64,000 nt of DNA from Macrostomum lignano (taxonomy: Eukaryota): assembly GCA_002269645.1 (NCBI GenBank), contig NIVC01001484.1:207527-271526 (forward strand), written 5' to 3'. The notes beneath the pieces were generated by a model. That model had not been told where the DNA came from. It ran no database searches and saw nothing but the letters and a program-made list of their open reading frames with translations. Of this stretch, positions 38,142-60,152 are shown one piece after another (positions within the stretch are counted from its first letter, which is position 1; each line of letters opens with the position of its first letter). The translations under genes were made by a program, and so were the position numbers.

Positions 38142-41078
38142 TTACGAGTTTAAAAGTGCAACGAGCACGATGCACTCAGGCTCACGTACGAACGGGTTAT
38201 AGTCTGACGTAACTTTCATGTCGTCAATTCTCGTCCACACACAGCTCAGTACGCTTGCTGTGAAATGTCCCGATTTCAGTCGGTTTCCATGGTGTGATAT
38301 TGTGGCCACTGGCTTACCAAGTGTAGAAACACCCCCTGACCTTGAAGAAAAGCTTACAGGAGTTTGAAGCTTAAGGTGGCCATCCATACTAGCACGATCA
38401 AGATATATCAGGGTAAACTTTCCAGGTGTTACTACGATCTCTTGATTACAATCGCCCAGGCAATTGGCGTCCGAACATTTCACTACCTGAGGAGCGACAA
38501 AAGCGCAGAAGATTTTGTCTAAACTGACAATTGAGCGCTCAAATTGACAGAGAGGAATGCAAATCACTCTGTTATCGATTGTGCCAACAGGAACTTCAGC
38601 ACTTGTGCGCTGGCAATCCCGACAAGTTTGAATGAGTGAAAATTCTGTGAAAGCATCTGATGACAGAAATTCCAGATGTATTAGAAGCGTTTGAACAAAT
38701 TCGTTGACGCAATGGTGCTGATTTGTTTGAAATGAATCTGGATGTTGCAACCGAACTGCCGTTAACAGTGGAGTGACTGTTGCAGACCGCTGTTGCATCT
38801 CCGTCAGAAGACGAAGCAGCTCTCGATGGACTTGGTCGTTGCTAGTCTCTTTTAAAATGCATCCATTAGAATGCAGGCAGAGAAACAATTGCACTGCTGC
38901 ATTTGCGTAGCACTGCAGGCCATTATTTGGCAACCCAAATAACTTCTTCGGCGAATTCAATGAACCAGTAGCATTTGAACTGTGCCTCTGTTCATCTTGC
39001 TGCGATTCAGCACTGTCTCTGCGAGGTGCATTTGGAGCTGGATGACCACCAGATTGATCATTGTAAAGATTGGCAATCAGTGCTTTTGGCAAAGCACTGT
39101 CAATAAATCGGAAGCTGCTGCCACACATGTTGTAGCTTTCGGGGTGATATGCATAACAGCCTAGCATTCTAACCACAGCCATAACATGACTGTCACACCC
39201 TGCTGTCCTGCTTCCGGCCTTTGAGGATGAAAAGTAGCCATGCAGACGCAGCAGCCCCGAGTCACGAAATCCGAATCGGTTACCACTTGCAGTTTCGCAA
39301 ATACGAAGGACAACTCGGTAAGTTTTTGACCGATGACGGGAATGAAGAACGGCTAAATATATCCAAGATGGCCTCCATTCTCCAAACTTACTGCTCCACC
39401 CCTTTGGTGGCGCTCGCTGATGAAACTTCCAGCATTTTAAATGGCTTGGCAGTTCAGAAATCAACAATTCGAAATCGCGCCACGAGTCTCCAGCGTAGCT
39501 ACTGAGCACCTCATGAACTCTGACGTTTTCGATGTAGCGTTTTGACTGAAGAACGTGGTATGGGCCGATGCTAAGCTCTTCCAGATTTCTTTCGTCAACG
39601 CTGGGGAACCCTGAACTTTCAGGGTCCAGGGGATCCACTGCTGTCCATTTTCGGGTAGAACTCGTTGGTATTCGAGTCAAATCGCAATTGTACTCAAGTT
39701 GCTCAATTTCGTCTAGCTCATTCGCAATGAAAAGACGTTTAGCAAAGTTCCGTCCGTATTCGAACATGGAGCAATCTGACCATGACGGCGGCAGACTCCT
39801 TGTAGCTTGAAATCCTGGATGCGAACGGTTGAATTTTGCCATGGAGTTTTCAATAACAACATCGAGCCGGCTGCGTTCGGTAAACTCTGGGGCATGTAGC
39901 CATTGGTACGGCTCCTGTCGCTCATTTATGCATTTGTCCTGCTTGATTGCAGCAAAGCTACATTCTACGAGATAACGGAAAAGCGTAGCGCAGCGACTTG
40001 TATTTGCTTCGATTGATGTAAGCTTTCCTGGTATTGATCGGTCACCAACAGGAGCCTCATTATTTACAAATTCAAACTGCTCGTTTAGAACTCGGTCACC
40101 TGGACTGGTCGGAAATAGAAGCGTCGTGCAGCCTTTACTATTAGTCTCTATAAAGTCGCGGAAGTTAACCGAAGTTGGTGAACAAAGTTGGTGGCTGTAA
40201 CCTTTGTCGAAAATGCCAATAACGTGATAATCTTTCTGTACAGAGCACAGAATGCGCAACAAAATGGGCTCTATTAGTCCTTCAGCCTCCATGTCAACTT
40301 GCATTGCAGTCAAATTCCCATCGCCCATTGTTGGCGAGATAGCGGCGGTAAGGGGAGCGGTGTAGATAATTTTTCCTCTACTGTTGACAACCGCCATTTT
40401 TTTGTTCACATTCATTTTCTTGCCGGAAAAGTAAGTTCGAATTTGCGTGTGGTGTGAGCTGCTCTTAGGGAGATAAAAGTAAGTATGATCACCCACTAGA
40501 AGAACAAGCTTCTTGCCTTTGAGTAGCGTGTGAAATACACCGAGAATAAATTGATCGCGTACTACATTTTCCTCAAGCAGAGTCTGAATCGGAGTCGACG
40601 CTATCGACCTCGGTTGATATGGATCCCGTAGGTACTGCTCCTTGGCAATCTCCCAAAAAATGTCGCATGCTCTTTGGGCAGAAATGTTGAAATCGAAAGC
40701 TAATGATTGAAAGCTGCAACCTTGGCGAAGCTTCTTCAGGTACAAAAATATTCGAGATGGCTTTGTCAAAATACGAAGGCGAGATACTTCTGGTAACATT
40801 TCTGAGAAGCTATCGAAATCACTATAGCTAAGACCGCAAATACGTTTGAACTCCTTCTCATTTGCGGTTCGTGGAAAAAGGTTTGGGTTCAAAAAAACTT
40901 TCACATACTTACCACCGACCGCAAGAAACTGAAGCGCCTCTCGTGCGTTTCTCGGAGGCGCGAAGGCTCCAGACGATTCAGATGAGCAGCGACCACATCT
41001 AGTCGTTTCGAGATGTCGGTTCAAATTGGCTGCTTTGCTGAATTGATGACCACATTGAGAGCAAGTAAAATCGGACAT
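38142..41078 (-). CDS. Transposase fused to a ubiquitin-specific protease: C2H2 finger - HTH - DDE_Tnp_4-like nuclease - SWIM-like - USP/UCH (C19), ~978 aa
   Basis: N-terminal CSQCGHQFSKAANLNRH; HTH region IFLYLKKLRQGCSFQSLAFDFNISAQRACDIFW; catalytic motifs GDHTYFYLPKS...QIRTYFSGKK, FDKGY and RYLVECSFAAIK. SWIM-like SSKAGSRTAGCDSH. USP Cys box GLPNNGLQCYANAAVQLF, His box ISHHGNRLKSGHFTA, and WTRIDDMKV. Uninterrupted ORF; first ATG at 41078. Confidence 0.9.
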   Translation of the reverse strand: MSDFTCSQCGHQFSKAANLNRHLETTRCGRCSSESSGAFAPPRNAREALQFLAVGGKYVKVFLNPNLFPRTANEKEFKRICGLSYSDFDSFSEMLPEVSRLRILTKPSRIFLYLKKLRQGCSFQSLAFDFNISAQRACDIFWEIAKEQYLRDPYQPRSIASTPIQTLLEENVVRDQFILGVFHTLLKGKKLVLLVGDHTYFYLPKSSSHHTQIRTYFSGKKMNVNKKMAVVNSRGKIIYTAPLTAAISPTMGDGNLTAMQVDMEAEGLIEPILLRILCSVQKDYHVIGIFDKGYSHQLCSPTSVNFRDFIETNSKGCTTLLFPTSPGDRVLNEQFEFVNNEAPVGDRSIPGKLTSIEANTSRCATLFRYLVECSFAAIKQDKCINERQEPYQWLHAPEFTERSRLDVVIENSMAKFNRSHPGFQATRSLPPSWSDCSMFEYGRNFAKRLFIANELDEIEQLEYNCDLTRIPTSSTRKWTAVDPLDPESSGFPSVDERNLEELSIGPYHVLQSKRYIENVRVHEVLSSYAGDSWRDFELLISELPSHLKCWKFHQRAPPKGWSSKFGEWRPSWIYLAVLHSRHRSKTYRVVLRICETASGNRFGFRDSGLLRLHGYFSSSKAGSRTAGCDSHVMAVVRMLGCYAYHPESYNMCGSSFRFIDSALPKALIANLYNDQSGGHPAPNAPRRDSAESQQDEQRHSSNATGSLNSPKKLFGLPNNGLQCYANAAVQLFLCLHSNGCILKETSNDQVHRELLRLLTEMQQRSATVTPLLTAVRLQHPDSFQTNQHHCVNEFVQTLLIHLEFLSSDAFTEFSLIQTCRDCQRTSAEVPVGTIDNRVICIPLCQFERSIVSLDKIFCAFVAPQVVKCSDANCLGDCNQEIVVTPGKFTLIYLDRASMDGHLKLQTPVSFSSRSGGVSTLGKPVATISHHGNRLKSGHFTASVLSCVWTRIDDMKVTSDYNPFVREPECIVLVALLNS

Positions 41079-41389
41079 TACTAGCAAGTATAAAACGCAA
41101 TCTGCAACAAATCTGCACCTGTCATAAAACTAAGTAAGAAAAACTGACCAAAACCTTAACTTCATTAATATATCACTTAAAATATATCACTTAAACTAAT
41201 GCTACAAATACTTGACGCACAGTATCAAAAATCTCTCGCCTAAAGTGGTCAAATCAAAACCGCGAAAACATTCTCAAAAATCCGGAAAAATTAAACGACG
41301 GAAATATTACAATGCAAACAATATATAATAGCTAAAATAAAATACACCCGCTAATGCGATATTCGAATAGAATAGAGCTTCGTCACTTG

Positions 41390-43120
41390 AAACCGGATGG
41401 GATGTCTCGGCGATTCTAGTCGTCTGGGCCGACAAGTTATCGATTGCAGTCGGTTTGGTCCGGAGCTGAACTTCGGGCTCCATTCCAGAGCCTTAAGTTG
41501 ACATGAGATCCCCATTTTATCCCCTTTATCCCCTGGGACCCCAAGGAAGGGAGCCGGATGGGATGTCTCGGCGATTCTAGTCGTCTGGGCCGACAAGTTA
41601 TCGATTGCAGTCGGTTTGGTCCGGAGCTGAACTTCGGGCTCCATTCCAGAGCCTTAAGTTGACATGAGATCCCCATTTTATCCCCTTTATCCCCTGGGAC
41701 CCCAAGGAAGGGAGCCGGATGGGATGTCTCGGCGATTCTAGTCGTCTGGGCCGACAAGTTATCGATTGCAATCGGTTTGGTCCGGAGCTGAACTTCGGGC
41801 TCCATTCCAGAGCCTTAAGTTGACATGAGATCCCCATTTTATCCCCTTTATCCCCTGGGACCCCAAGGAAGGGAGCCGGATGGGATGTCTCGGCGATTCT
41901 AGTCGTCTGGGCCGACAAGTTATCGATTGCAGTCGGTTTGGTCCGGAGCTGAACTTCGGGCTCCATTCCAGAGCCTTAAGTTGACATGAGATCCCCATTT
42001 TATCCCCTTTATCCCCTGGGACCCCAAGGAAGGGAGCCGGATGGGATGTCTCGGCGATTCTAGTCGTCTGGGCCGACAAGTTATCGATTGCAGTCGGTTT
42101 GGTCCGGAGCTGAACTTCGGGCTCCATTCCAGGGCCTTAAGTTGACATGAGATCCCCATTTTATCCCCTTTATCCCCTGGGACCCCAAGGAAGGGAGCCG
42201 GATGGGATGTCTCGGCGATTCTAGTCGTCTGGGCCGACAAGTTATTGATTGCAGTCGGTTTGGGCCGGAGCTGAACTTCGGGCTCCATTCCAGAGCCTTA
42301 AGTTGACATGAGATCCCCATTTTATCCCCTTTATCCCCTGGGACCCCAAGGAAGGGAGCCGGATGGGATGTCTCGGCGATTCTAGTCGTCTGGGCCGACA
42401 AGTTATCGATTGCAGTCGGTTTGGTCCGGAGCTGAACTTCGGGCTCCATTCCAGAGCCTTAAGTTGACATGAGATCCCCATTTTATCCCCTTTATCCCCT
42501 GGGACCCCAAGGAAGGGAGCCGGATGAGATGTCTCGGCGATTCTAGTCGTCTGGGCCGACAAGTTATCGATTGCAGTCGGTTTGGTCCGGAGCTGAACTT
42601 CGGGCTCCATTCCAGAGCCTTAAGTTGACATGAGATCCCCATTTTATCCCCTTTATCCCCTGGGACCCCAAGGAAGGGAGCCGGATGGGATGTCTCGGCG
42701 ATTCTAGTCGTCTGGGCCGACAAGTTATCGATTGCAGTCGGTTTGGTCCGGAGCTGAACTTCGGGCTCCATTCCAGGGCCTTAAGTTGACATGAGATCCC
42801 CATTTTATCCCCTTTATCCCCTGGGACCCCAAGGAAGGGAGCCGGATGGGATGTCTCGGCGATTCTAGTCGTCTGGGCCGACAACTTATCGATTGCAGTC
42901 GGTTTGGGCCGGAGCTGAACTTCGGGCTCCATTCCAGAGCCTTAAGTTGACATGAGATCCCCATTTTATCCCCTTTATCCCCTGGGACCCCAAGGAAGGG
43001 AGCCGGATGGGATGTCTCGGCGATTCTAGTCGTCTGGGCCGACAAGTTATCGATTGCAGTCGGTTTGGTCCGGAGCTGAACTTCGGGCTCCATTCTGGTG
43101 CTTAAGTTGACATCCCCTTT
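41390..43120 (-). repeat. Right-arm array of the 161 bp unit (~11 copies), inverted relative to the left arm
   Basis: Reverse complement of the left-arm unit, same period. Confidence 0.98.
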
Positions 43121-43661
43121 GTCGGAATTGATTGGAAATTTCGCAGTATAAGCCATAGATAGGAGGACAGAAAAAGCCAATTCATAGCCAACTGTCGGAA
43201 TTGATTGCAAATTGTTTGAATTGATTGCAAAGTGTCGGTTTCTCGTGGTAGCTTGTTTGCTTTGTTTGAAAATTGTCGCTTTTGAAAGCACATTTGTCGG
43301 AATTGAATGCACGTCCGGCCAAGTACTATACCATAAACTGTCTGAATTGAATGAAAAGATTTTGACTTTGATTGCACGTTTGCCAAAATAGAATGGAAAA
43401 GGTGTAATAGGCCATTGACTAATGTTTTGTAGATGTGTGACTAATCGCCCATAGACTCATGGTTTCTAGATGTATGGCTAGCTAATACCCAATAGAATAT
43501 AGAGGCTATCAAAGATGCAGCAATTAGCCAACATACAGATAAAACACGTAGGCTATAGGCTTTGTTGGACATTTGAAAAACAAAAAAACTTTTTTCAATT
43601 ATATGACAACAACCGTTTAGTACTATGAGTAGTTAGTCATAAACAGAATCTTAAAGCTGCG

Positions 43662-44630
43662 TCACTGCTGCGGACCATAGTAGCCGCCTTCGGTTCGCCA
43701 GTCAGGCGCTCCGGTCCCACTGGTACCTACTGTGGAGTTTTGATGGTGCGACTGCTGCTGCTGAGGCTGGTTGTTGCTGGTGCCTCCGCTGCCCCTGCCA
43801 CCAGTGAAGACGGTCAGAATGAGAAATGCTCCGGAAATCAGGGCGCACAGGAGCGACCAGCCGAGCTTGTCTGAGTGGGTCACGGTTCGAGCAATGCTGG
43901 CCGCGATCAGGCCGCTGATGCCTAGTGGGGAAAGTGAGATTCAGGAAGTGGCTTGGCAGTTTGGGCTTTGGCGGAGAGTGACACAAGGGGTGAGGTGGAG
44001 AGTGATACAGTGGGTGAGGTGGAGAGTGATACAGTAGGTGAGGCGGAGAGTGACACAATGAATGAGGCGGAGAGTGACACAGTGGGTGAGGCGGAGAGTG
44101 ACACAATGAATGAGGCGGAGAGTGACACAGGAGATGAGGCGAAGAGTGACACAGTGGGTGAGGCGGAGAGTGACACAATGAATAAGGCGGAGAGTGACAC
44201 AGTGGGTGAGGCGGAGAGTGACACAGTGGGTGAGGCGGAGAGTGACACAGTGGGTGAGGCGGAGAGTGACACAATGAATAAGGCGGAGAGTAACACAGTG
44301 GGTGAGGCGGAGAGTGACACAGTGGGTGAGGCCGAGAGTGAAACAGGGGGTGAGGCGGCCGGCCCAGCCCTCACCTGCCAATATCATGCAGCCGGCATCC
44401 ACAAGCAGCACAATATTATTGCCCTCGAAAATGTCGAGAAAGGTACAGGCAAACGTGAACGCCAATCCAATAAAGTAAGTTAATAAACCGATAATTAAAA
44501 AGGCGGTCTTCGCGTCATTCTGTTGAGCGTCGAGCAGGAAGACGTCGTTAGCCGACAGCCAGACAATGAAGCCGATTGAAGACAGAATGAAGGCCAACCG
44601 AAGCCACAGCGGCCGTTCGTGGAAGATCAT
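43662..44630 (-). CDS. Small four-TM membrane protein (claudin/PMP22-like topology), two exons, ~171 aa
   Basis: Exon 44630-44375 (three hydrophobic segments, ending CMILAG|GTGAGG); acceptor CACTAG| at 43921 continues GISGLIAASIART...LGWSLLCALISGAFLILTV, then a G/Q-rich tail. Phase 1 matches. Confidence 0.75.
43975..44345 (+). repeat. 24 bp minisatellite filling the intron of the 4-TM gene
   Basis: GAGGCGGAGAGTGACACAGTGGGT, about 15 copies. Confidence 0.95.
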
Positions 44631-45140: not shown

Positions 45141-45142
<2 letters not shown>

Positions 45143-45209
<67 letters not shown>

Positions 45210-45275
45210 GACTAACTAACTAACCAACTAACTAACTAACTAAATAACTAACTAACTAACTAACTAACTATCTAT

Positions 45276-45355
<80 letters not shown>

Positions 45356-45356
45356 A

Positions 45357-45391
<35 letters not shown>

Positions 45392-45419
45392 CTATCTAAC
45401 TAACTAACTAACTATCTAT

Positions 45420-45507
<88 letters not shown>

Positions 45508-45538
45508 TTAACTAACTAATTAACTTAACTAACTAACG

Positions 45539-45604
<66 letters not shown>

Positions 45605-45632
45605 ATAACTAACTAACTAACTAACTATCTAT

Positions 45633-45673
<41 letters not shown>

Positions 45674-45674
45674 C

Positions 45675-45705
<31 letters not shown>

Positions 45706-45706
45706 C

Positions 45707-45748
<42 letters not shown>

Positions 45749-45749
45749 A

Positions 45750-45784
<35 letters not shown>

Positions 45785-45788
45785 CTAT

Positions 45789-45826
<38 letters not shown>

Positions 45827-45850
45827 TACTAACTGACTGACTAACTGAAT
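45143..45850 (+). repeat. (CTAA)n microsatellite
   Basis: Near-perfect array with CTAT/CCAA variants. Confidence 0.99.
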
Positions 45851-46789
45851 GACTAACTCAGTATAAAAGTGGCACATGACAGGCACCTAATTGCATAAAA
45901 ATGAAGGAAAGCTTTAAGAACCAGTTCGGTCACATAACTGCGCATATAAATAAGAATTTTGAATAATTAATGCCTTGACTTGACATAGCGAAAACGCGTC
46001 TTTACTTGTATGTGCATACCAATTCTTGATTAATTCGCTTTTTCAGCTCGCAAGTCTCCTGGCAAAAATCTAAGACGGAAATTGGACTGCAAATGAGCTT
46101 TCTGCCAGGGTTTCAGTACTGAACCTGCTGTGTCGTACCTACGAGCGTTAAATGATTTTTTGTTAAAGTACACCAATATTCATTTTTCAGTCTCTGCTGC
46201 TACCACACGGTCACCTCTATTTCATAACGGATCAATTTATATAGTTTTATAATTTTTCTAATAAGTTTAGAAGTGGAATGTACTCGCGGTTTTCTGAGAC
46301 ATAGTTTATTGGTTGAATCTTTGTTGAAATCAACAAGAATGTTGTTCTTTTAAAAGCAAATTTCTCAATAGTTTATTTGTGATGCAAGTTTTAAGCTGTG
46401 CATCAAACTACAAATCCAACACTTAAAGTATCCTATGTTTTAATGAACAATCAGCCTACTAACAAGTAGCAAATATGAGACATGCAATGGGCTGCCTAGG
46501 AAAGACTAAGTTAAAATTGAACTGCCATAGTGCAGAACAATACTCTAATTGAAGTTAGTCCAAGGCCGAATCTCTCAACAACTATGAAAATTATTTGAAG
46601 GCTTAACTTCGTACATTGGATGTGACCACGCATAAACTCTGTCAAATTTAAATATTGAAAAATAAGTCTACCAAAGACTGGAAAAAGCAAAATTCAAGTT
46701 AACAAACGTTGATAAAGAGAGCCGAGTTCGATCTGTGGCTGTAAATATTACAGAAACTTATGCACTGTAAGCATGAGATGAAGAGCAGA

Positions 46790-47045
46790 GATCAGAGACA
46801 CAGTGTGAGACACAAGGCCGAGATCAGAGACACAGTGTGAGACACAAGGCCGAGATCAGAGACACAGTGTGAGACACAAGGCCGAGATCAGAGACACAGT
46901 GTGAGACACAAGGCCGAGATCAGAGACACAGTGTGAGACACAAGGCCGAGATCAGAGACACAGTGTGAGACACAAGGCCGAGATCAGAGACACAGTGTGA
47001 GACACAAGGCCGAGATCAGAGACGCAGTGTGAGACACAAGGCAGA
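46790..47045 (+). repeat. 32 bp tandem repeat (AGATCAGAGACACAGTGTGAGACACAAGGCCG), ~8 copies
   Basis: Perfect array; its reverse complement closely matches the 32-bp variant in 48505-51240. Confidence 0.96.
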
Positions 47046-47604
47046 GAGGCACTGCTATATTGCTTTATCTGTTAAAATAAATCGAGCCTAGACAGAATCA
47101 AGTCAAATGCAATATCGATGGGCAGCCTACTCACTTGACAACCCCCCAACCAGCAGCCACAATACGCCACCACGTTCTACTTTATTGCTCCTGGCCTGCT
47201 GACGTCAGTCGATTTGACTGGAACCTAGTTTGAGTCAATTATTTTAATAGATAAAGCAGTCTTCTTTTAATTGAAGCAAATAAAAGCCGTGAATCTCCTG
47301 GTCCACCTCCATAATTGCGGACACGCCTCGGTCTTTAATAGGTAGCCTCGATTCCCCAAATCACACCTGCTCTGCAGTGGGTGTAATTGCAGCATTTCGT
47401 TGGATGAAATCTAATGCTAATAATTGAATAATTTTGCCTATCAGGCAACTGCTCAATTGAGCTTCTGAGCCAAAAGTCTATAAAATGCGGCACCTTTTCG
47501 CAGCTCCTGACCATCGAACCAATCGACTTACGGGTGCCTCATCGGTTCTCCAGACTCAACCCAGCTTCCTACCTGCCTGCCTGCAGCTCAAGCCGCATCT
47601 CGCC

Positions 47605-48504: not shown

Positions 48505-51240
48505 GTGTCTTTGATCTCTGCCTTGTGTCTCAGGCTGTATCTCTGATCTCTGCCTTGTGTCTCTGATCTCTGCCTTGTGTCTCAGGCTGTGTCTCTGATC
48601 TCTGCCTTGTGTCTCTGATCTCTGCCTTGTGTCTCTGATCTCTGCCTTGTGTCTCAGGCTGTGTCTCTGATCTCTGCCTTGTGTCTCTGATCTCTGCCTT
48701 GTGTCTCTGATCTCTGCCTTGTGTCTCTGATCTCTGCCTTGTGTCTCTGATCTCTGCCTTGTGTCTCTGATCTCTGCCTTGTGTCTCTGATCTCTGCCTT
48801 GTGTCTCTGATCTCTGCCTTGTGTCTCTGATCTCTGCCTTGTGTCTCTGATCTCTGCCTTGTGTCTCTGATCTCTGCCTTGTGTCTCAGGCTGTGTCTCT
48901 GATCTCTGCCTTGTGTCTCAGGCTGTATCTCTGATCTCTGTCTTGTGTCTCTGATCTCTGCCTTGTGTCTCTGATCTCTGCCTTGTGTCTCAGGCTGTGT
49001 CTCTGATCTCTGCCTTGTGTCTCAGGCTGTATCTCTGATCTCTACCTTGCGTCTCTGATCTCTACCTTGTGTCTCTGATCTCTGCCTTGTGTCTCTGATC
49101 TCTACCTTGCGTCTCTGATCTCTGCCTTGTGTCTCAGGCTGTGTCTTTGATCTCTGCCTTGTGTCTCTGATCTCTGCCTTGTGTCTCTGATCTCTGCCTT
49201 GTGTCTCTGATCTCTGCCTTGTGTCTCTGATCTCTGCCTTGTGTCTCTGATCTCTGCCTTGTGTCTCTGATCTCTGCCTTGTGTCTCTGATCTCTGCCTT
49301 GTGTCTCTGATCTCTGCCTTGTGTCTCTGATCTCTGCCTTGTGTCTCTGATCTCTGCCTTGTGTCTCTGATCTCTGCCTTGTGTCTCTGATCTCTGCCTT
49401 GTGTCTCTGATCTCTGCCTTGTGTCTCTGATCTCTGCCTTGTGTCTCAGGCTGTGTCTCTGATCTCTGCCTTGTGTCTCAGGCTGTATCTCTGATCTCTG
49501 TCTTGTGTCTCTGATCTCTGCCTTGTGTCTCTGATCTCTGCCTTGTGTCTCTGATCTCTGCCTTGTGTCTCTGATCTCTGCCTTGTGTCTCTGATCTCTG
49601 CCTTGTGTCTCAGGCTGTGTCTCTGATCTCTGCCTTGTGTCTCAGGCTGTATCTCTGATCTCTGTCTTGTGTCTCTGATCTCTGCCTTGTGTCTCTGATC
49701 TCTGCCTTGTGTCTCAGGCTGTGTCTCTGATCTCTGCCTTGTGTCTCAGGCTGTATCTCTGATCTCTACCTTGCGTCTCTGATCTCTACCTTGTGTCTCT
49801 GATCTCTGCCTTGTGTCTCTGATCTCTACCTTGCGTCTCTGATCTCTGCCTTGTGTCTCAGGCTGTGTCTTTGATCTCTGCCTTGTGTCTCTGATCTCTG
49901 CCTTGTGTCTCTGATCTCTGCCTTGTGTCTCTGATCTCTGCCTTGTGTCTCTGATCTCTGCCTTGTGTCTCTGATCTCTGCCTTGTGTCTCTGATCTCTG
50001 CCTTGTGTCTCTGATCTCTGCCTTGTGTCTCAGGTTGTGTCTCTGATCTCTGCCTTGTGTCTCAGGCTGTGTCTCTGATCTCTGCCTTGTGTCTCTGATC
50101 TCTGCCTTGTGTCTCTGATCTCTGCCTTGTGTCTCTGATCTCTGCCTTGTGTCTCTGATCTCTGCCTTGTGTCTCTGATCTCTGCCTTGTGTCTCTGATC
50201 TCTGCCTTGTGTCTCTGATCTCTGCCTTGTGTCTCAGGCTGTGTCTCTGATCTCTGCCTTGTGTCTCAGGCTGTATCTCTGATCTCTGTCTTGTGTCTCT
50301 GATCTCTGCCTTGTGTCTCTGATCTCTGCCTTGTGTCTCAGGCTGTGTCTCTGATCTCTGCCTTGTGTCTCAGGCTGTATCTCTGATCTCTACCTTGCGT
50401 CTCTGATCTCTACCTTGTGTCTCTGATCTCTGCCTTGTGTCTCTGATCTCTACCTTGCGTCTCTGATCTCTGCCTTGTGTCTCAGGCTGTGTCTTTGATC
50501 TCTGCCTTGTGTCTCTGATCTCTGCCTTGTGTCTCTGATCTCTGCCTTGTGTCTCTGATCTCTGCCTTGTGTCTCTGATCTCTGCCTTGTGTCTCTGATC
50601 TCTGCCTTGTGTCTCTGATCTCTGCCTTGTGTCTCTGATCTCTGCCTTGTGTCTCTGATCTCTGCCTTGTGTCTCTGATCTCTGCCTTGTGTCTCAGGCT
50701 GTGTCTCTGATCTCTGCCTTGTGTCTCAGGCTGTATCTCTGATCTCTGTCTTGTGTCTCTGATCTCTGCCTTGTGTCTCTGATCTCTGCCTTGTGTCTCA
50801 GGCTGTGTCTCTGATCTCTGCCTTGTGTCTCAGGCTGTATCTCTGATCTCTACCTTGCGTCTCTGATCTCTACCTTGTGTCTCTGATCTCTGCCTTGTGT
50901 CTCTGATCTCTACCTTGCGTCTCTGATCTCTGCCTTGTGTCTCAGGCTGTGTCTTTGATCTCTGCCTTGTGTCTCTGATCTCTGCCTTGTGTCTCTGATC
51001 TCTGCCTTGTGTCTCTGATCTCTGCCTTGTGTCTCTGATCTCTGCCTTGTGTCTCTGATCTCTGCCTTGTGTCTCTGATCTCTGCCTTGTGTCTCTGATC
51101 TCTGCCTTGTGTCTCAGGTTGTGTCTCTGATCTCTGCCTTGTGTCTCAGGCTGTGTCTCTGATCTCTGCCTTGTGTCTCAGGCTGTGTCTCTGATCTCTG
51201 CCTTGTGTCTGAGGCTGTGTCTCTGATCTCTGCCTTGTGT
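48505..51240 (+). repeat. 20/32 bp satellite (TCTCTGATCTCTGCCTTGTG with or without TCTCAGGCTGTG), ~2.7 kb
   Basis: Mix of 20-bp and 32-bp units with recurrent variant blocks. Confidence 0.98.
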
Positions 51241-58243: not shown

Positions 58244-60152
58244 ATGGACCAGCAAGAGGACTCAGAAGCGACAGTCGATCTGAAGCAAACATTCTGCTTC
58301 GACTTTCTGTCCGGGCCAGAAACTACGGAGGCGGCCAGTCATAGCAACCAGAGCAACCGCACTGACATCATGAAGAAGTACTTAGTCTACATGGAGCTAC
58401 CCAAGATTAGAGTGAGTGTCTGATATCTCAACTAATCTACTGGTAGTAGTTTAGATTTACCAAAAACTTTTGGTATTAAAATTTTTTTATCACTGTTCTT
58501 ACCAAGTCATTTTTATCTACACTGTACAGATTGGAGACTACAGAAAGTCGAGCTGCGTCTCCGGCAACGTGATCCGCTTTCACTTTCTGCTTCGTATCGC
58601 TCGCGATGAAGAGAATATGGTGCTGCGACTGCAACCCATCAAGGCCTACAAAACGCCCGTGGTGAACTTCGCCGTCATCCATCGGCCTTTCCTTGACGAT
58701 GACAGCGCTAAAGGTCCAATTCCAAAGAGTCCCGGTGTGCGCAGCCCGCTGATCAACTACGAAGGCGAAGAGACCAGTCCAGGAGTGCCCGACAGTCGTA
58801 CCGATGATATCATTGAAGACTTTCAAAGCGACAAAGCTCAGGCGCCTAGTGTCGATGATGAACAAAAGCAACAGGGACAGAGGCGATCAAGCGATGCTAG
58901 CATCGGTAAATCTCAGCCTAAACTGAAAGAAAGCCCGAAGAGGCGGTCCAGTCAGGCTAGTATCGACAAAGACAAAGTACAGCAGAAATCCTCCGAGAGC
59001 CCGAAGAGGCGGTCCAGTCAGGCTAGTATCGAAAAAGACAAAGTACAGCAGAAATCCTCCGAGAGCCCGAAGAGGCGGTCCAGTCAGGCCAGTATCGACA
59101 AAGACAAAGTACAGCAGAAATCCTCCGAGAGCCCGAAGAGGCGGTCCAGTCAGGCGAGTATCGACAAAGCTCAACAAGAGCAGGCAAAGAGTCCCCAGAA
59201 ACATTCGAGTTCAGAAAAGACCCAGACCCAGCCGTCGGAGAGTCCCAAGCGACGATCTAGTCAGGCAAGCACCGACGAGCAGCAGCGGTTAGAAGTCGAG
59301 GCGCCTGTGAGGCGGCCAAGCCAGACAAGTCTCGACCAGTCTAAAATGGCGAGCGTTGATCAGAGACGTTCGAGCCAATCAAGCACAGGTGCTCAGCAGC
59401 AGCGATTTGAAGTTGAGGCGCCCGTTAGGCGGCCAAGCCAAGCTAGCGAAGATCTGCTTCACCAGGCCGGGGCAGCCAGGCAGCAAGAGAGTCAAACCAG
59501 TTCGGAAAATCGTCAGTCTCAGGTACCGGAGACGTCTCAACAGAGACCTGTCCAGGGCATCTTGGCTGAGTCTCCAAAAAAGGCCCGACTTGAGATCGAG
59601 TCACCGACACCTCGTCAGGACATTTCCCCAGCTAGACTTCTCTCAGACGATAATGCAACCACTCGCACAGATACGACCGGTCGTCAAAAGCAGCGCCGTC
59701 CAAAGAAGTATTTTGTCTACTGCGAGATACCGAAGATCCTCCTTGGCGACTATCGCAACTCCAGCGTCATCTGCTCTGAGATTATCCACGCGCATTTCCT
59801 GATGAAAATTGCCAAAGATGAAGAAAGCAACCAGCCGCGTCTGAAACCGATCAAGCGGTATCACCGGCCAAAAGTGAACTTTGCAGTCATTCACCGGTCG
59901 CTACTGGTTGACGACGACGCAATCGGGCCGATTCCTCGCAGCCCGAACGTTCGGTCACCGATGATCCGCGAGGATGAACCCGAGGAGGAAGACGACGTTC
60001 CGCCAGACAACGTGATGCACGCCACAATGGGCTTCTGCTACGGTCGCCTGCCCCGCTCTAAGTACGAGCTGATCACGCAGTGGTCTTTGGTCAATGGAGA
60101 CGGTGGTGGACCGCCACTTCCTGAGCTCGTGCTCAGCAAGGCCGATGTGTGA
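58244..60152 (+). CDS. Uncharacterised ~596 aa protein with two copies of a ~90 aa domain separated by an S/Q/K-rich repeat linker
   Basis: Exon 58244-58411 (AGA|GTGAGT) joins exon 58530-60152 (TACAG|ATT) in phase 0. The join gives KKYLVYMELPKIRIGDYRKSS, which aligns with the downstream KKYFVYCEIPKILLGDYRNSS. Confidence 0.85.

What the first reader, a model, noticed from the sequence alone, without database searches (positions are those of the whole stretch)
38142..41078. DNA transposase fused to an intact ubiquitin-specific protease (USP/C19) domain
Seen: one uninterrupted ~978 aa ORF with a C2H2 finger, HTH, DDE_Tnp_4-like catalytic motifs (GDHTY, FDKGY, RYLVE), a SWIM-like segment, a low-complexity linker and a C-terminal ~265 aa USP fold. 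The USP part retains the Cys box (GLPNNGLQCYAN), His box (HHGNRLKSGHFTA) and WTRIDD. Established: transposons are known to carry Ulp1/C48 SUMO proteases (Mutator, Ginger, Zisupton) and OTU proteases (Helitron, Ginger). I do not recall a USP fused to a PIF/Harbinger/ISL2EU-type transposase. Inference: the element may use its own deubiquitinase to protect the transposase from degradation or to remove repressive histone ubiquitin at targets, i.e. a self-encoded anti-silencing module.
Basis: partly seen in the sequence, partly recalled or inferred. Interest (0 to 1): 0.95.

Follow-up and report, generated by a model that had tools for sequence, protein, structure and literature searches.

The report
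Transposon whose transposase carries a deubiquitinase
An intact, apparently young 8.3-kb cut-and-paste DNA transposon encodes one protein in which a PIF/Harbinger-ISL2EU-type transposase is fused to a complete ubiquitin-specific protease, a combination that recurs in distant relatives and that I did not find described for this transposon class.

Summary
Window 38142-41078 (minus strand) is one stop-free 978-aa ORF. Its C-terminus (aa 713-978) is a USP/C19 domain by four tests. Pfam UCH scores above its gathering threshold. A family profile hits USP2 at E 8e-37. The AlphaFold model has pLDDT 90.6, and its best Foldseek matches are USP18, USP2 and USP46. Cys723, His938, Asp952 and a four-Cys zinc ribbon are all present.

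The N-terminal 670 aa is a DDE transposase. hhalign links it (probability 100%, E 2e-47) to relatives that match Pfam DDE_Tnp_4. The triad is D197/D291/E372.

The ORF lies in a complete 8,290-bp element (35115-43404). The element has a TA target-site duplication and about 2.4-kb inverted ends built from 161-bp tandem arrays.

The fusion is not a chance read-through. The closest relative (51% identity) and at least five deep lineages from marine and other metagenomes carry it with the catalytic residues kept. In one such family, dN/dS of the USP part is 0.39-0.74. Two other branches carry a Ulp1 protease at the same position.

The element fails the tested marks of canonical ISL2EU, Harbinger and Spy.

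A Pfam UCH domain has been reported in Helentrons (2024). I found no report of one in a DDE transposon, but Repbase and Dfam could not be searched. The function, a self-carried deubiquitinase that aids transposition, is inferred.

Verdict: new variant of a known kind.

The parts
35113..35114 (.). Left copy of the TA target-site duplication
   Evidence: The element interrupts a 37-bp satellite. Removing the element plus one TA restores the unit GTGTGACTAATAGGCC exactly.
35115..43404 (-). Complete 8,290-bp DNA transposon. Termini are CAAATTTTTCCATTC... and ...GAATGGAAAAGGTG.
   Evidence: Alignment of the outer ends. The terminal 31-mer is found only at the two ends, with 0 matches expected by chance. 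No other copy or fragment is in the window.
35115..37545 (+). Left terminal inverted repeat, about 2.4 kb: outer unique part 35120-35328, arm-specific spacer 35329-35569, 161-bp tandem array 35577-37457 (11.7 copies), inner unique part to 37545
   Evidence: The arms are 98-99% complementary. The outer 211 bp is 97.6% identical to the right end.
41305..43404 (-). Right terminal inverted repeat: inner unique part, 161-bp array 41393-43113 (10.7 copies), outer unique part to 43404
43405..43406 (.). Right copy of the TA target-site duplication
38142..41078 (-). Single intronless ORF of 978 aa plus stop codon: the transposase-USP fusion protein
40995..41069 (-). N-terminal C2HC zinc finger (aa 4-28)
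   Evidence: Weak Pfam zf-C2H2 hit. Conserved in P0001. The AF2 model shows a beta-beta-alpha fold.
40653..40769 (-). Helix-turn-helix of HTH_Tnp_4 type (aa 104-142)
   Evidence: Pfam E 7.6e-5, below the gathering score. 23 of 49 relatives match.
39939..40511 (-). DDE catalytic core (aa 190-380): D197 (40488-40490), D291 (40206-40208), E372 (39963-39965)
   Evidence: These columns are invariant in the family alignments. They align to the D/D/E of DDE_Tnp_4-positive relatives by hhalign at probability 100%, E 2e-47. The AF2 model has pLDDT 90.8 and its best PDB fold match is Tn5 transposase, weakly.
39144..39446 (-). SWIM-like beta/alpha module (aa 545-645). The zinc site is degenerate here (S617, S619, C628, H631).
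   Evidence: Family consensus GYxCxCKxGxRTxGCCxHV. The same Ser substitutions occur in the closest relative L001. No Pfam SWIM hit.
38943..39065 (-). Low-complexity linker (aa 672-712)
   Evidence: pLDDT is below 50 at the C-terminal end of the transposase model and at the N-terminal start of the USP model.
38145..38942 (-). USP/C19 deubiquitinase domain (aa 713-978): Cys723 (38910-38912), His938 (38265-38267), Asp952 (38223-38225), zinc ribbon C819/C822/C868/C873
   Evidence: Pfam UCH above the gathering score. Conserved columns in alignment A2. Family profile against PDB: USP2 at E 7.9e-37. AF2 pLDDT 90.6. Foldseek: USP18, USP2 and USP46 at E about 1e-16.

Best explanation
SHOWN. [quoted passage not shown]
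- It made a TA duplication when it inserted into a 37-bp satellite.
- Its inverted ends are about 2.4 kb long and consist mostly of 161-bp tandem arrays.
- Its single 978-aa ORF reads C2HC finger, HTH, DDE core (D197/D291/E372), SWIM-like module, flexible linker, USP domain (C723/H938/D952 plus a Cys4 zinc ribbon).
- The transposase-USP fusion is an inherited feature of a transposase family. The closest relative and at least five deep lineages have it. The catalytic residues are kept across lineages whose USP domains are only 18-35% identical to the window's.
- In one family the USP part evolves under purifying selection, though weaker than on the transposase.

INFERRED. The USP is an active deubiquitinase tethered to the transposase by the linker. 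It acts locally to remove ubiquitin from the transposase or transpososome (escape from proteasomal turnover, my first choice) or from chromatin proteins at the donor or target site (second choice), and so raises transposition success. Sister lineages carry a Ulp1 (SUMO-type) protease at the same C-terminal position. This suggests the selected property is removal of ubiquitin-like conjugates near the transposase.
For: - ORF and motifs.
- Element ends and TA duplication, verified by restoring the satellite unit.
- Arms 98-99% identical and ORF intact.
- USP identity: Pfam UCH 37.5 bits against 23.9; profile against PDB, USP2 at E 7.9e-37 and 113 USP chains; AF2 pLDDT 90.6, pTM 0.87; Foldseek top 50 all USPs, TM about 0.7.
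- Transposase identity: 33/49 relatives match DDE_Tnp_4, 23/49 HTH_Tnp_4; hhalign probability 100%, E 2e-47 over 479 columns with D/D/E aligned; AF2 pLDDT 90.8.
- Fusion conserved: P0010, P0022, P0033 and P0046 are full-length fusions with Pfam UCH; P0007, P0069 and P0083 are fragments with SWIM-like plus USP.
- P0007 continues the P0001 lineage. Both come from JGI sample 3300040801 and their contigs overlap at 89-95% nucleotide identity.
- The P0010 and P0033 clusters each have 20 members, most of them full-length.
- Catalytic Cys/His/Asp and zinc-ribbon Cys are conserved.
- dN/dS in the P0010 family: transposase 0.15; USP 0.39 (Fisher p 0.003), 0.48 (p 0.03) and 0.74 (not significant).
- Ulp1 at the same position in P0114 and P0127.
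- Published analogy: Helentron VTD deubiquitinases are active and were proposed to protect transposition proteins from degradation (PMC9741609).
Against: - No enzymatic or transposition data exist.
- The USP part is less constrained than the transposase: 34% against 51% identity to the closest relative, and higher dN/dS. One of the three dN/dS comparisons is not below 1 significantly.
- Many family members lack any protease (P0003-6 and P0012 end 10-45 aa after the SWIM-like module), so the USP is dispensable for transposition as such.
- Only one copy is in the window, and no identical or near-identical copy was found elsewhere, so activity of this copy is not shown.
- The window protein does not hit Pfam DDE_Tnp_4 directly.
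- The SWIM-like zinc site has lost two ligands.
- The substrate (ubiquitin or another ubiquitin-like protein such as ISG15 or NEDD8) cannot be told from sequence. The top fold hit is USP18, an ISG15 protease.
Confidence: 0.72

Rival explanations
1. The USP acts on chromatin, not on the transposase. It removes histone ubiquitin (H2A/H2B) or ubiquitin on repair or silencing factors at the element or its target, as an anti-silencing or target-access module.
For: The USP is tethered to a DNA-bound enzyme by a flexible linker. Sister lineages have Ulp1 at the same position, and from general knowledge SUMO is central to transposon silencing in animals. The protease is dispensable in many relatives, as expected for a host-interaction module.
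Against: Nothing in the sequence identifies a histone or nucleosome-binding surface. No data distinguish this from self-deubiquitination.
Confidence: 0.2
2. The USP domain serves mainly as a ubiquitin-binding or targeting module, for example directing the transposase to ubiquitin-marked sites such as stalled forks or breaks. Catalysis would be secondary.
For: The USP fold binds ubiquitin through its fingers, and the zinc ribbon is conserved. Constraint on the domain is relaxed.
Against: The catalytic Cys, His and Asp/Asn are kept in every full-length fusion lineage examined. A pure binding module would not need them.
Confidence: 0.08
3. The USP is a passenger: a captured host gene fragment read through by chance, with no role for the element.
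For: Transposons do capture host fragments. Many relatives lack the domain. Only one copy is seen in this window.
Against: The same fusion is present in the closest relative and in at least five deep lineages, with the triad and zinc ribbon intact. dN/dS is below 1 in the USP part of the P0010 family. The fold is complete.
Confidence: 0.04
4. The ORF is a domesticated host gene derived from a transposase, not a mobile element.
For: The P0033 ORF is nucleotide-identical in six contigs from different samples, which could fit a single-copy gene in one species.
Against: In the window the ORF is flanked by 98-99% identical inverted ends and a TA duplication inside a satellite whose unit is restored on removal. 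The metagenome contigs all break at 6-7 kb, as repeats do.
Confidence: 0.03

Closest known systems
ISL2EU group of the PHIS superfamily (Han et al. 2014, PMC4122938; Han et al. 2015, PMC4482050)
   Same: DDE_Tnp_4-type transposase with an upstream HTH. 2-bp target-site duplication in A/T-rich DNA. Zinc-finger DNA-binding domain at the N-terminus. Animal or marine hosts.
   Different: - The duplication is TA, not AT (target A|AT|T).
- The ends begin CA, not GG.
- The finger is C2HC, not THAP.
- There is no YqaJ exonuclease ORF.
- Inverted ends are about 2.4 kb against the reported 6-259 bp.
- A C-terminal USP domain is not mentioned in either paper.
Helentron / HLE2 rolling-circle transposons carrying a Pfam UCH domain (HELIANO, PMC11417382)
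   Same: A USP-type (Pfam UCH) domain recurrently associated with a DNA transposon lineage and used as a clade marker.
   Different: Those elements use a RepHel (HUH nuclease plus helicase) and transpose by rolling circle. Here the USP is fused in frame to a DDE cut-and-paste transposase. No biochemical or structural analysis of the Helentron UCH is given in that paper.
VTD and OTU deubiquitinases of Helitrons/Helentrons (Erven et al. 2022, PMC9741609)
   Same: Transposon-encoded cysteine deubiquitinases with conserved catalytic residues. They were proposed to protect transposition proteins from proteasomal degradation.
   Different: Different protease folds (VTD with an Asp-x-His site, or OTU) and a different transposition machinery. 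VTD activity has been shown experimentally. Here nothing has been assayed.
Ulp1/C48 proteases in DNA transposons (Ginger, PMC2836005, seen; MULE, CACTA and Zisupton from my own knowledge)
   Same: A ubiquitin-like-protein protease carried by a cut-and-paste element. Within the present transposase family, P0114 and P0127 have Ulp1 at the same C-terminal position as the USP. Zisupton also combines a SWIM finger with a protease (from memory).
   Different: C48 is a different clan and normally acts on SUMO or NEDD8. Those superfamilies have unrelated transposases and longer duplications (8 bp in Zisupton, from memory).
Foldback-like elements with long ends made of tandem repeats (Drosophila FB, Galileo; from my own knowledge)
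   Same: Kilobase-long inverted ends composed of tandem subrepeats.
   Different: Unrelated transposases. Within PHIS, the longest inverted ends reported in PMC4482050 are 1042 bp.

Membership tests
USP / peptidase C19 (Pfam UCH PF00443) | Match to the family profile above the curated threshold | tested here: met
   37.5 bits against a cutoff of 23.9, aa 715-958 covering profile positions 2-237 of 254. A family profile hits USP2 at E 7.9e-37.
USP / peptidase C19 (Pfam UCH PF00443) | Cys box with the catalytic Cys preceded by a conserved Asn | tested here: met
   GLPNNGLQC(723)YAN. The Cys column is invariant in all sequences that cover it.
USP / peptidase C19 (Pfam UCH PF00443) | His box with the catalytic His, followed by the Asp/Asn of the triad | tested here: met
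   SGH(938)F and WTRID(952)D(953). The His column is invariant, D953 is at least 90% conserved, and position 952 is D, N or S across the family.
USP / peptidase C19 (Pfam UCH PF00443) | USP catalytic-core fold (fingers, palm, thumb) | tested here: met
   AF2 pLDDT 90.6, pTM 0.87. Foldseek top 50 are all USPs, E down to 6e-17, TM about 0.7. The Cys4 zinc ribbon is present. Triad geometry in the model could not be measured because coordinates are not exposed.
USP / peptidase C19 (Pfam UCH PF00443) | Hydrolysis of ubiquitin (or ubiquitin-like) conjugates | not testable with these tools
   Needs Ub-AMC, Ub-PA or chain-cleavage assays with a C723A control.
PHIS superfamily (PIF/Harbinger-ISL2EU-Spy; Pfam DDE_Tnp_4) | Direct match of the window protein to Pfam DDE_Tnp_4 | tested here: not met
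   No hit even at E up to 10.
PHIS superfamily (PIF/Harbinger-ISL2EU-Spy; Pfam DDE_Tnp_4) | Homology of the catalytic region to DDE_Tnp_4 transposases, with an aligned DDE triad | tested here: met
   33/49 relatives match DDE_Tnp_4, best E 7e-25. hhalign of the query clade against the DDE_Tnp_4-positive clade: probability 100%, E 2e-47, with D197/D291/E372 aligned to their D/D/E.
PHIS superfamily (PIF/Harbinger-ISL2EU-Spy; Pfam DDE_Tnp_4) | HTH_Tnp_4 upstream of the DDE core | tested here: inconclusive
   22.7 bits against a cutoff of 27, E 7.6e-5. 23/49 relatives match.
PHIS superfamily (PIF/Harbinger-ISL2EU-Spy; Pfam DDE_Tnp_4) | Terminal inverted repeats and a short (0-3 bp) duplication in A/T-rich DNA | tested here: met
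   Inverted ends and a TA duplication.
ISL2EU group | AT duplication at an A|AT|T target, ends starting GG | tested here: not met
   The duplication is 2 bp but TA, at GAC|TA|ATA. The ends start CA (compared with PMC4482050).
ISL2EU group | THAP domain in the transposase | tested here: not met
   No THAP hit. A C2HC finger takes its place.
ISL2EU group | Second ORF with a YqaJ exonuclease domain | tested here: not met
   Apart from the repeat-array reading frames, the only ORFs of 80 aa or more between the ends are two that lie antisense within the transposase ORF (80 and 94 aa) and one 87-aa ORF in repetitive DNA. These were not scanned against Pfam.
Canonical PIF/Harbinger | 3-bp TWA duplication and a second Myb/SANT ORF | tested here: not met
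   2-bp TA duplication. No second ORF.
Spy | No duplication, insertion into AAATTT | tested here: not met
   A TA duplication is present and the target is GACTAATA.
SWIM zinc finger (PF04434) | CxCxnCxH ligands and a profile match | tested here: not met
   The window protein has S617, S619, C628 and H631. No Pfam SWIM hit in it (E up to 10) or in 48 relatives (E up to 0.001). Relatives do have CxCx9CCxH.

The most novel reading that the evidence does not exclude
A previously undescribed branch of the PHIS superfamily: TA duplication, C2HC/C2H2 finger, SWIM-like module and very long array-built ends. Its cut-and-paste transposase carries its own active USP deubiquitinase, and sister branches carry a Ulp1 protease in the same place. 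This would make removal of ubiquitin or SUMO conjugates a recurrent, convergently acquired counter-measure of DNA transposons against host control, and it would be testable with a single-ORF element.
Probability: 0.4. Interest if true: 0.8.

Novelty: new variant of a known kind. Interest (0 to 1): 0.66.

Why it matters
Transposons of several unrelated classes carry proteases for ubiquitin or its relatives: Ulp1, OTU, VTD and, in Helentrons, UCH. Why they do so is an open question, and only the VTD enzymes have been assayed.

This element has one ORF, and its DDE transposase, both ends and USP all appear intact. The role of the protease could therefore be tested by a single point mutation (C723A) in a standard excision and integration assay.

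The same transposase family uses USP in some branches, Ulp1 in others and nothing in the rest. That makes it a natural comparison set for asking what the deconjugating activity buys the element.

Tried and rejected
- phmmer of the whole protein against PDB gave only chance zinc-finger matches.
- The word-indexed 5.8-billion-protein search found one relative with the single protein and two with a fusion alignment. It missed all the deep fusions that the exhaustive representative search found.
- An exact look-up of the window protein in public assemblies found nothing.
- Metagenome scans found no true relatives: back-translated peptides and a degenerate KAGSRTAGCD pattern.
- The transposase profile against PDB sequences gave nothing. 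By fold there is only a weak Tn5 match (E 0.014).
- I looked for clear inverted ends in the relatives' contigs L002-L009. None spanned both ends, and the contigs are probably truncated.
- Rfam and tRNA scans of the window and Pfam on ten other long window ORFs gave no clue to the host organism.
- Eight literature searches found no paper on a USP in PHIS elements.
- A 3-bp TAA/TWA duplication was considered and rejected. It would need a mutated left copy, and it gives ends that do not both start with CA.
- dN/dS for the window lineage itself is not feasible. The nearest relative is 34-51% identical, so synonymous sites are saturated. I used the P0010 family instead.
Full report
**1. The observation.** The minus strand of window 38142-41078 carries one uninterrupted ORF of 978 aa from its ATG (981 aa from an upstream TTG). 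It is the longest ORF in the window that is not a microsatellite artefact.

Pfam results for the protein:
- UCH (PF00443) matches aa 715-958 at 37.5 bits, above the gathering score of 23.9.
- HTH_Tnp_4 (aa 104-142, 22.7 bits against 27) is below threshold.
- zf-C2H2 (aa 4-25, 18.6 bits against 25.2) is below threshold.
- No DDE family matches directly.

The ORF sits between two inverted arms (36173-37545 and 41305-42677 in the longest pairing, 98-99% complementary). The arms consist mostly of a 161-bp tandem repeat: 11.7 copies at 35577-37457 and 10.7 copies at 41393-43113, each array about 98% internally matched.

Aligning the outer flanks extends the arms to 35115 and 43404. The terminal 31-mer occurs only at those two places, with 0 matches expected by chance.

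The element lies inside a 37-bp satellite. Removing 35115-43404 plus one TA restores the unit GTGTGACTAATAGGCC exactly. The insertion therefore made a 2-bp TA duplication, and the element is 8,290 bp with termini CAAATTTTTCC... and CACCTTTTCC.... The outer 211 bp of the two ends are 97.6% identical. No other copy or fragment is in the window. No other plausible coding ORF lies between the ends: the other ORFs of 80 aa or more listed there are array artefacts, antisense to the main ORF, or in repetitive DNA.

**3. The USP part.**
- An alignment of the C-terminal domain with 16 relatives (A2) shows the expected conserved columns: the catalytic Cys (C723), the His-box His (H938), the Asp pair (D952/D953), and four Cys of the finger zinc ribbon (C819, C822, C868, C873).
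- A profile of that alignment hits 113 solved USP chains. The best is USP2 at E 7.9e-37 over the whole catalytic core.
- AlphaFold2 on aa 690-978 with this alignment gives pLDDT 90.6 and pTM 0.87.
- The 50 best Foldseek matches in the PDB are all USPs (USP18, USP2, USP46, USP8, USP21, USP35), with E down to 6e-17 and TM about 0.7.

The domain is a complete, compact USP core. I could not measure triad geometry because model coordinates are not exposed.

**4. The transposase part.** An exhaustive phmmer search of 1.84 billion representative proteins returned 131 hits. A local domain map shows that most share the order HTH, DDE, middle region, SWIM-like module.
- Of 49 longer relatives, 33 match Pfam DDE_Tnp_4 (best E 7e-25), 23 match DDE_Tnp_1 and 23 match HTH_Tnp_4.
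- D197, R368 and E372 are invariant and D291 nearly so in the 49-sequence alignment. All four are invariant within the query clade.
- hhalign of the query clade against the DDE_Tnp_4-positive clade gives probability 100% and E 2e-47 over 479 columns, with the three acidic residues aligned.
- AlphaFold2 of aa 1-690 gives pLDDT 90.8. The only suggestive solved fold is Tn5 transposase (E 0.014), and no solved relative is found by sequence.
- The family consensus after the DDE core is GYxCxCKxGxRTxGCCxHV, which has the SWIM pattern. The window protein and its closest relative both have Ser at the two first Cys positions. Pfam SWIM matches none of the 49 proteins scanned.

**5. Is the fusion real or a read-through?** It is real and inherited.
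- Full-length proteins P0010 (1048 aa), P0022 (955 aa), P0033 (1119 aa) and P0046 (1639 aa) combine this transposase with a Pfam UCH domain.
- P0007, P0069 and P0083 are fragments that join the SWIM-like module to a USP.
- The closest relative of the window protein is P0001 (51% identity over aa 6-560). It sits on a 3-kb contig that ends in the linker.
- P0007 comes from the same JGI sample. Its contig overlaps that end at 89-95% nucleotide identity and continues into a USP that is 34% identical to the window's.
- The P0010 and P0033 clusters each have 20 members, most of them full-length. P0033 lies on at least 19 contigs, several of them from TARA Oceans assemblies.

In the P0010 family, Nei-Gojobori dN/dS is 0.15 for the transposase. 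For the USP it is 0.39 (Fisher p 0.003), 0.48 (p 0.03) and 0.74 (not significant) in the three pairwise comparisons. The USP is under purifying selection, but weaker than on the transposase.

NJ trees place USP-bearing members in two clades of the transposase tree, interleaved with members that end just after the SWIM-like module. In the USP tree most transposon USPs group together. These trees carry no support values. They are compatible with one old fusion followed by losses but do not prove it.

Two members of the DDE_Tnp_4-positive clade (P0114, P0127) carry a Ulp1/Peptidase_C48 domain at the same C-terminal position.

**6. How it most likely works.**

Shown: the anatomy of the element, the family membership of both enzymatic domains, and conservation of the fusion and its catalytic residues.

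Inferred:
- The element moves by DDE-catalysed cut-and-paste. The N-terminal finger and HTH bind the ends, and the 161-bp arrays may supply multiple binding sites.
- The USP is an active deubiquitinase held near the transposase by a disordered linker.
- My first choice for its role is removal of ubiquitin from the transposase or transpososome, which would prolong its life. This was proposed for Helentron VTD enzymes (PMC9741609).
- My second choice is action on chromatin or silencing factors. The Ulp1 alternative in sister branches fits either role.
- The many protease-less relatives show that the domain is an accessory and not part of the core reaction.

**7. Comparison with what is known.** ISL2EU elements make AT duplications at A|AT|T, have ends starting GG, carry a THAP domain and a YqaJ ORF, and have inverted ends of 6-259 bp (PMC4122938 and PMC4482050). 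The window element shares only the 2-bp length of the duplication. Canonical Harbinger (3-bp TWA, Myb ORF) and Spy (no duplication) are also not met. TA duplications within PHIS have been reported for the fungal PHISTA lineage (PMC12730594).

The three PHIS papers I searched for those words (PMC4122938, PMC4482050, PMC9179366) do not mention ubiquitin or a protease. Eight literature searches found no description of a USP in a DDE transposon. They did find that Pfam UCH is a recurrent captured domain in Helentrons (PMC11417382). A USP in a DNA transposon is therefore not unprecedented. What looks new is its in-frame fusion to a DDE_Tnp_4-type transposase. I could not query Repbase, Dfam or InterPro architectures, so prior cataloguing cannot be excluded.

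**8. Verdict.** The structural interpretation is supported, with corrections: the element is not canonical ISL2EU or Harbinger, the SWIM site is degenerate, the finger is C2HC, and a Helentron precedent exists. The functional interpretation is plausible but untested. I rate it a new variant of a known kind (transposon-encoded ubiquitin or ubiquitin-like protease), with interest 0.66.

Noticed in passing
window 34942-35114 and 43405-43470: The transposon is inserted in a 37-bp satellite (unit AATGTTTTGTAGATGTGTGACTAATAGGCCATAGACT). The satellite continues in phase on the other side, which gives an internal 'empty site' control.
   Followed up: yes
window 35577-37457 and 41393-43113: The 161-bp tandem arrays inside both inverted ends give a ladder of overlapping mechanical 122-aa ORFs (MEPEVQLRTKPTAIDNLSAQ...). 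These are repeat artefacts, not genes. The arrays may hold transposase binding sites, which was not tested.
   Followed up: partly
window 35329-35569 versus 43121-43190: The two arms are asymmetric. The left arm has about 240 bp between the outer terminal segment and the array, the right arm only about 70 bp, and the two spacers align poorly.
   Followed up: no
window 30097-31399, 33654-34381, 43970-44358, 45142-45858, 46788-47047, 48536-50000+: The window is very rich in micro- and minisatellites: (TGTC)n, a 19-bp unit, a 24-bp unit, (AACT)n, a 32-bp unit and a 20-bp unit. Several regions show extreme strand skew, for example 14001-16000 with GC skew -0.67.
   Followed up: no
window 645-2408 and about 19750-20400: Long 'ORFs' that translate to SIYLSIYL... 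are 12-nt microsatellite arrays, not genes.
   Followed up: yes
window 58470-60152 (+): A 560-aa ORF has two homologous end segments of about 85 aa (...GDYRKSS...HFLLRIARDEE...VNFAVIHR...GPIPKSPGVRSP...) flanking serine-rich repeats (SPKRRSSQASIDKDKVQQKSSE). It has no Pfam match, and its nature is unknown.
   Followed up: partly
relatives P0114 (aa 566-706) and P0127 (aa 759-920): Members of the DDE_Tnp_4-positive branch of the same transposase family carry a Ulp1/Peptidase_C48 domain at the C-terminus, the position the USP occupies in the window protein.
   Followed up: partly
L009:202-1944 and L002:1568-2932: USP-bearing relatives have an upstream ORF with C2H2-type fingers. The one in L009 is in the same frame as the transposase ORF, about 60 bp away, and is homologous to the N-termini of P0003-P0005. 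It may be one gene split by a stop or a short intron.
   Followed up: partly
L002-L007 (P0033 ORF): The 3,360-bp fusion ORF is nucleotide-identical in six contigs from different ENA assemblies, three of them named TARA. All the contigs break at 6-7 kb. This fits either a very young multi-copy element or one widespread species.
   Followed up: partly
L001:2580-2745: The contig of the closest relative has an in-frame stop and a frameshift in the transposase ORF, so that copy is decayed or misassembled. L010, from the same sample, has a deletion of about 137 bp relative to it.
   Followed up: partly
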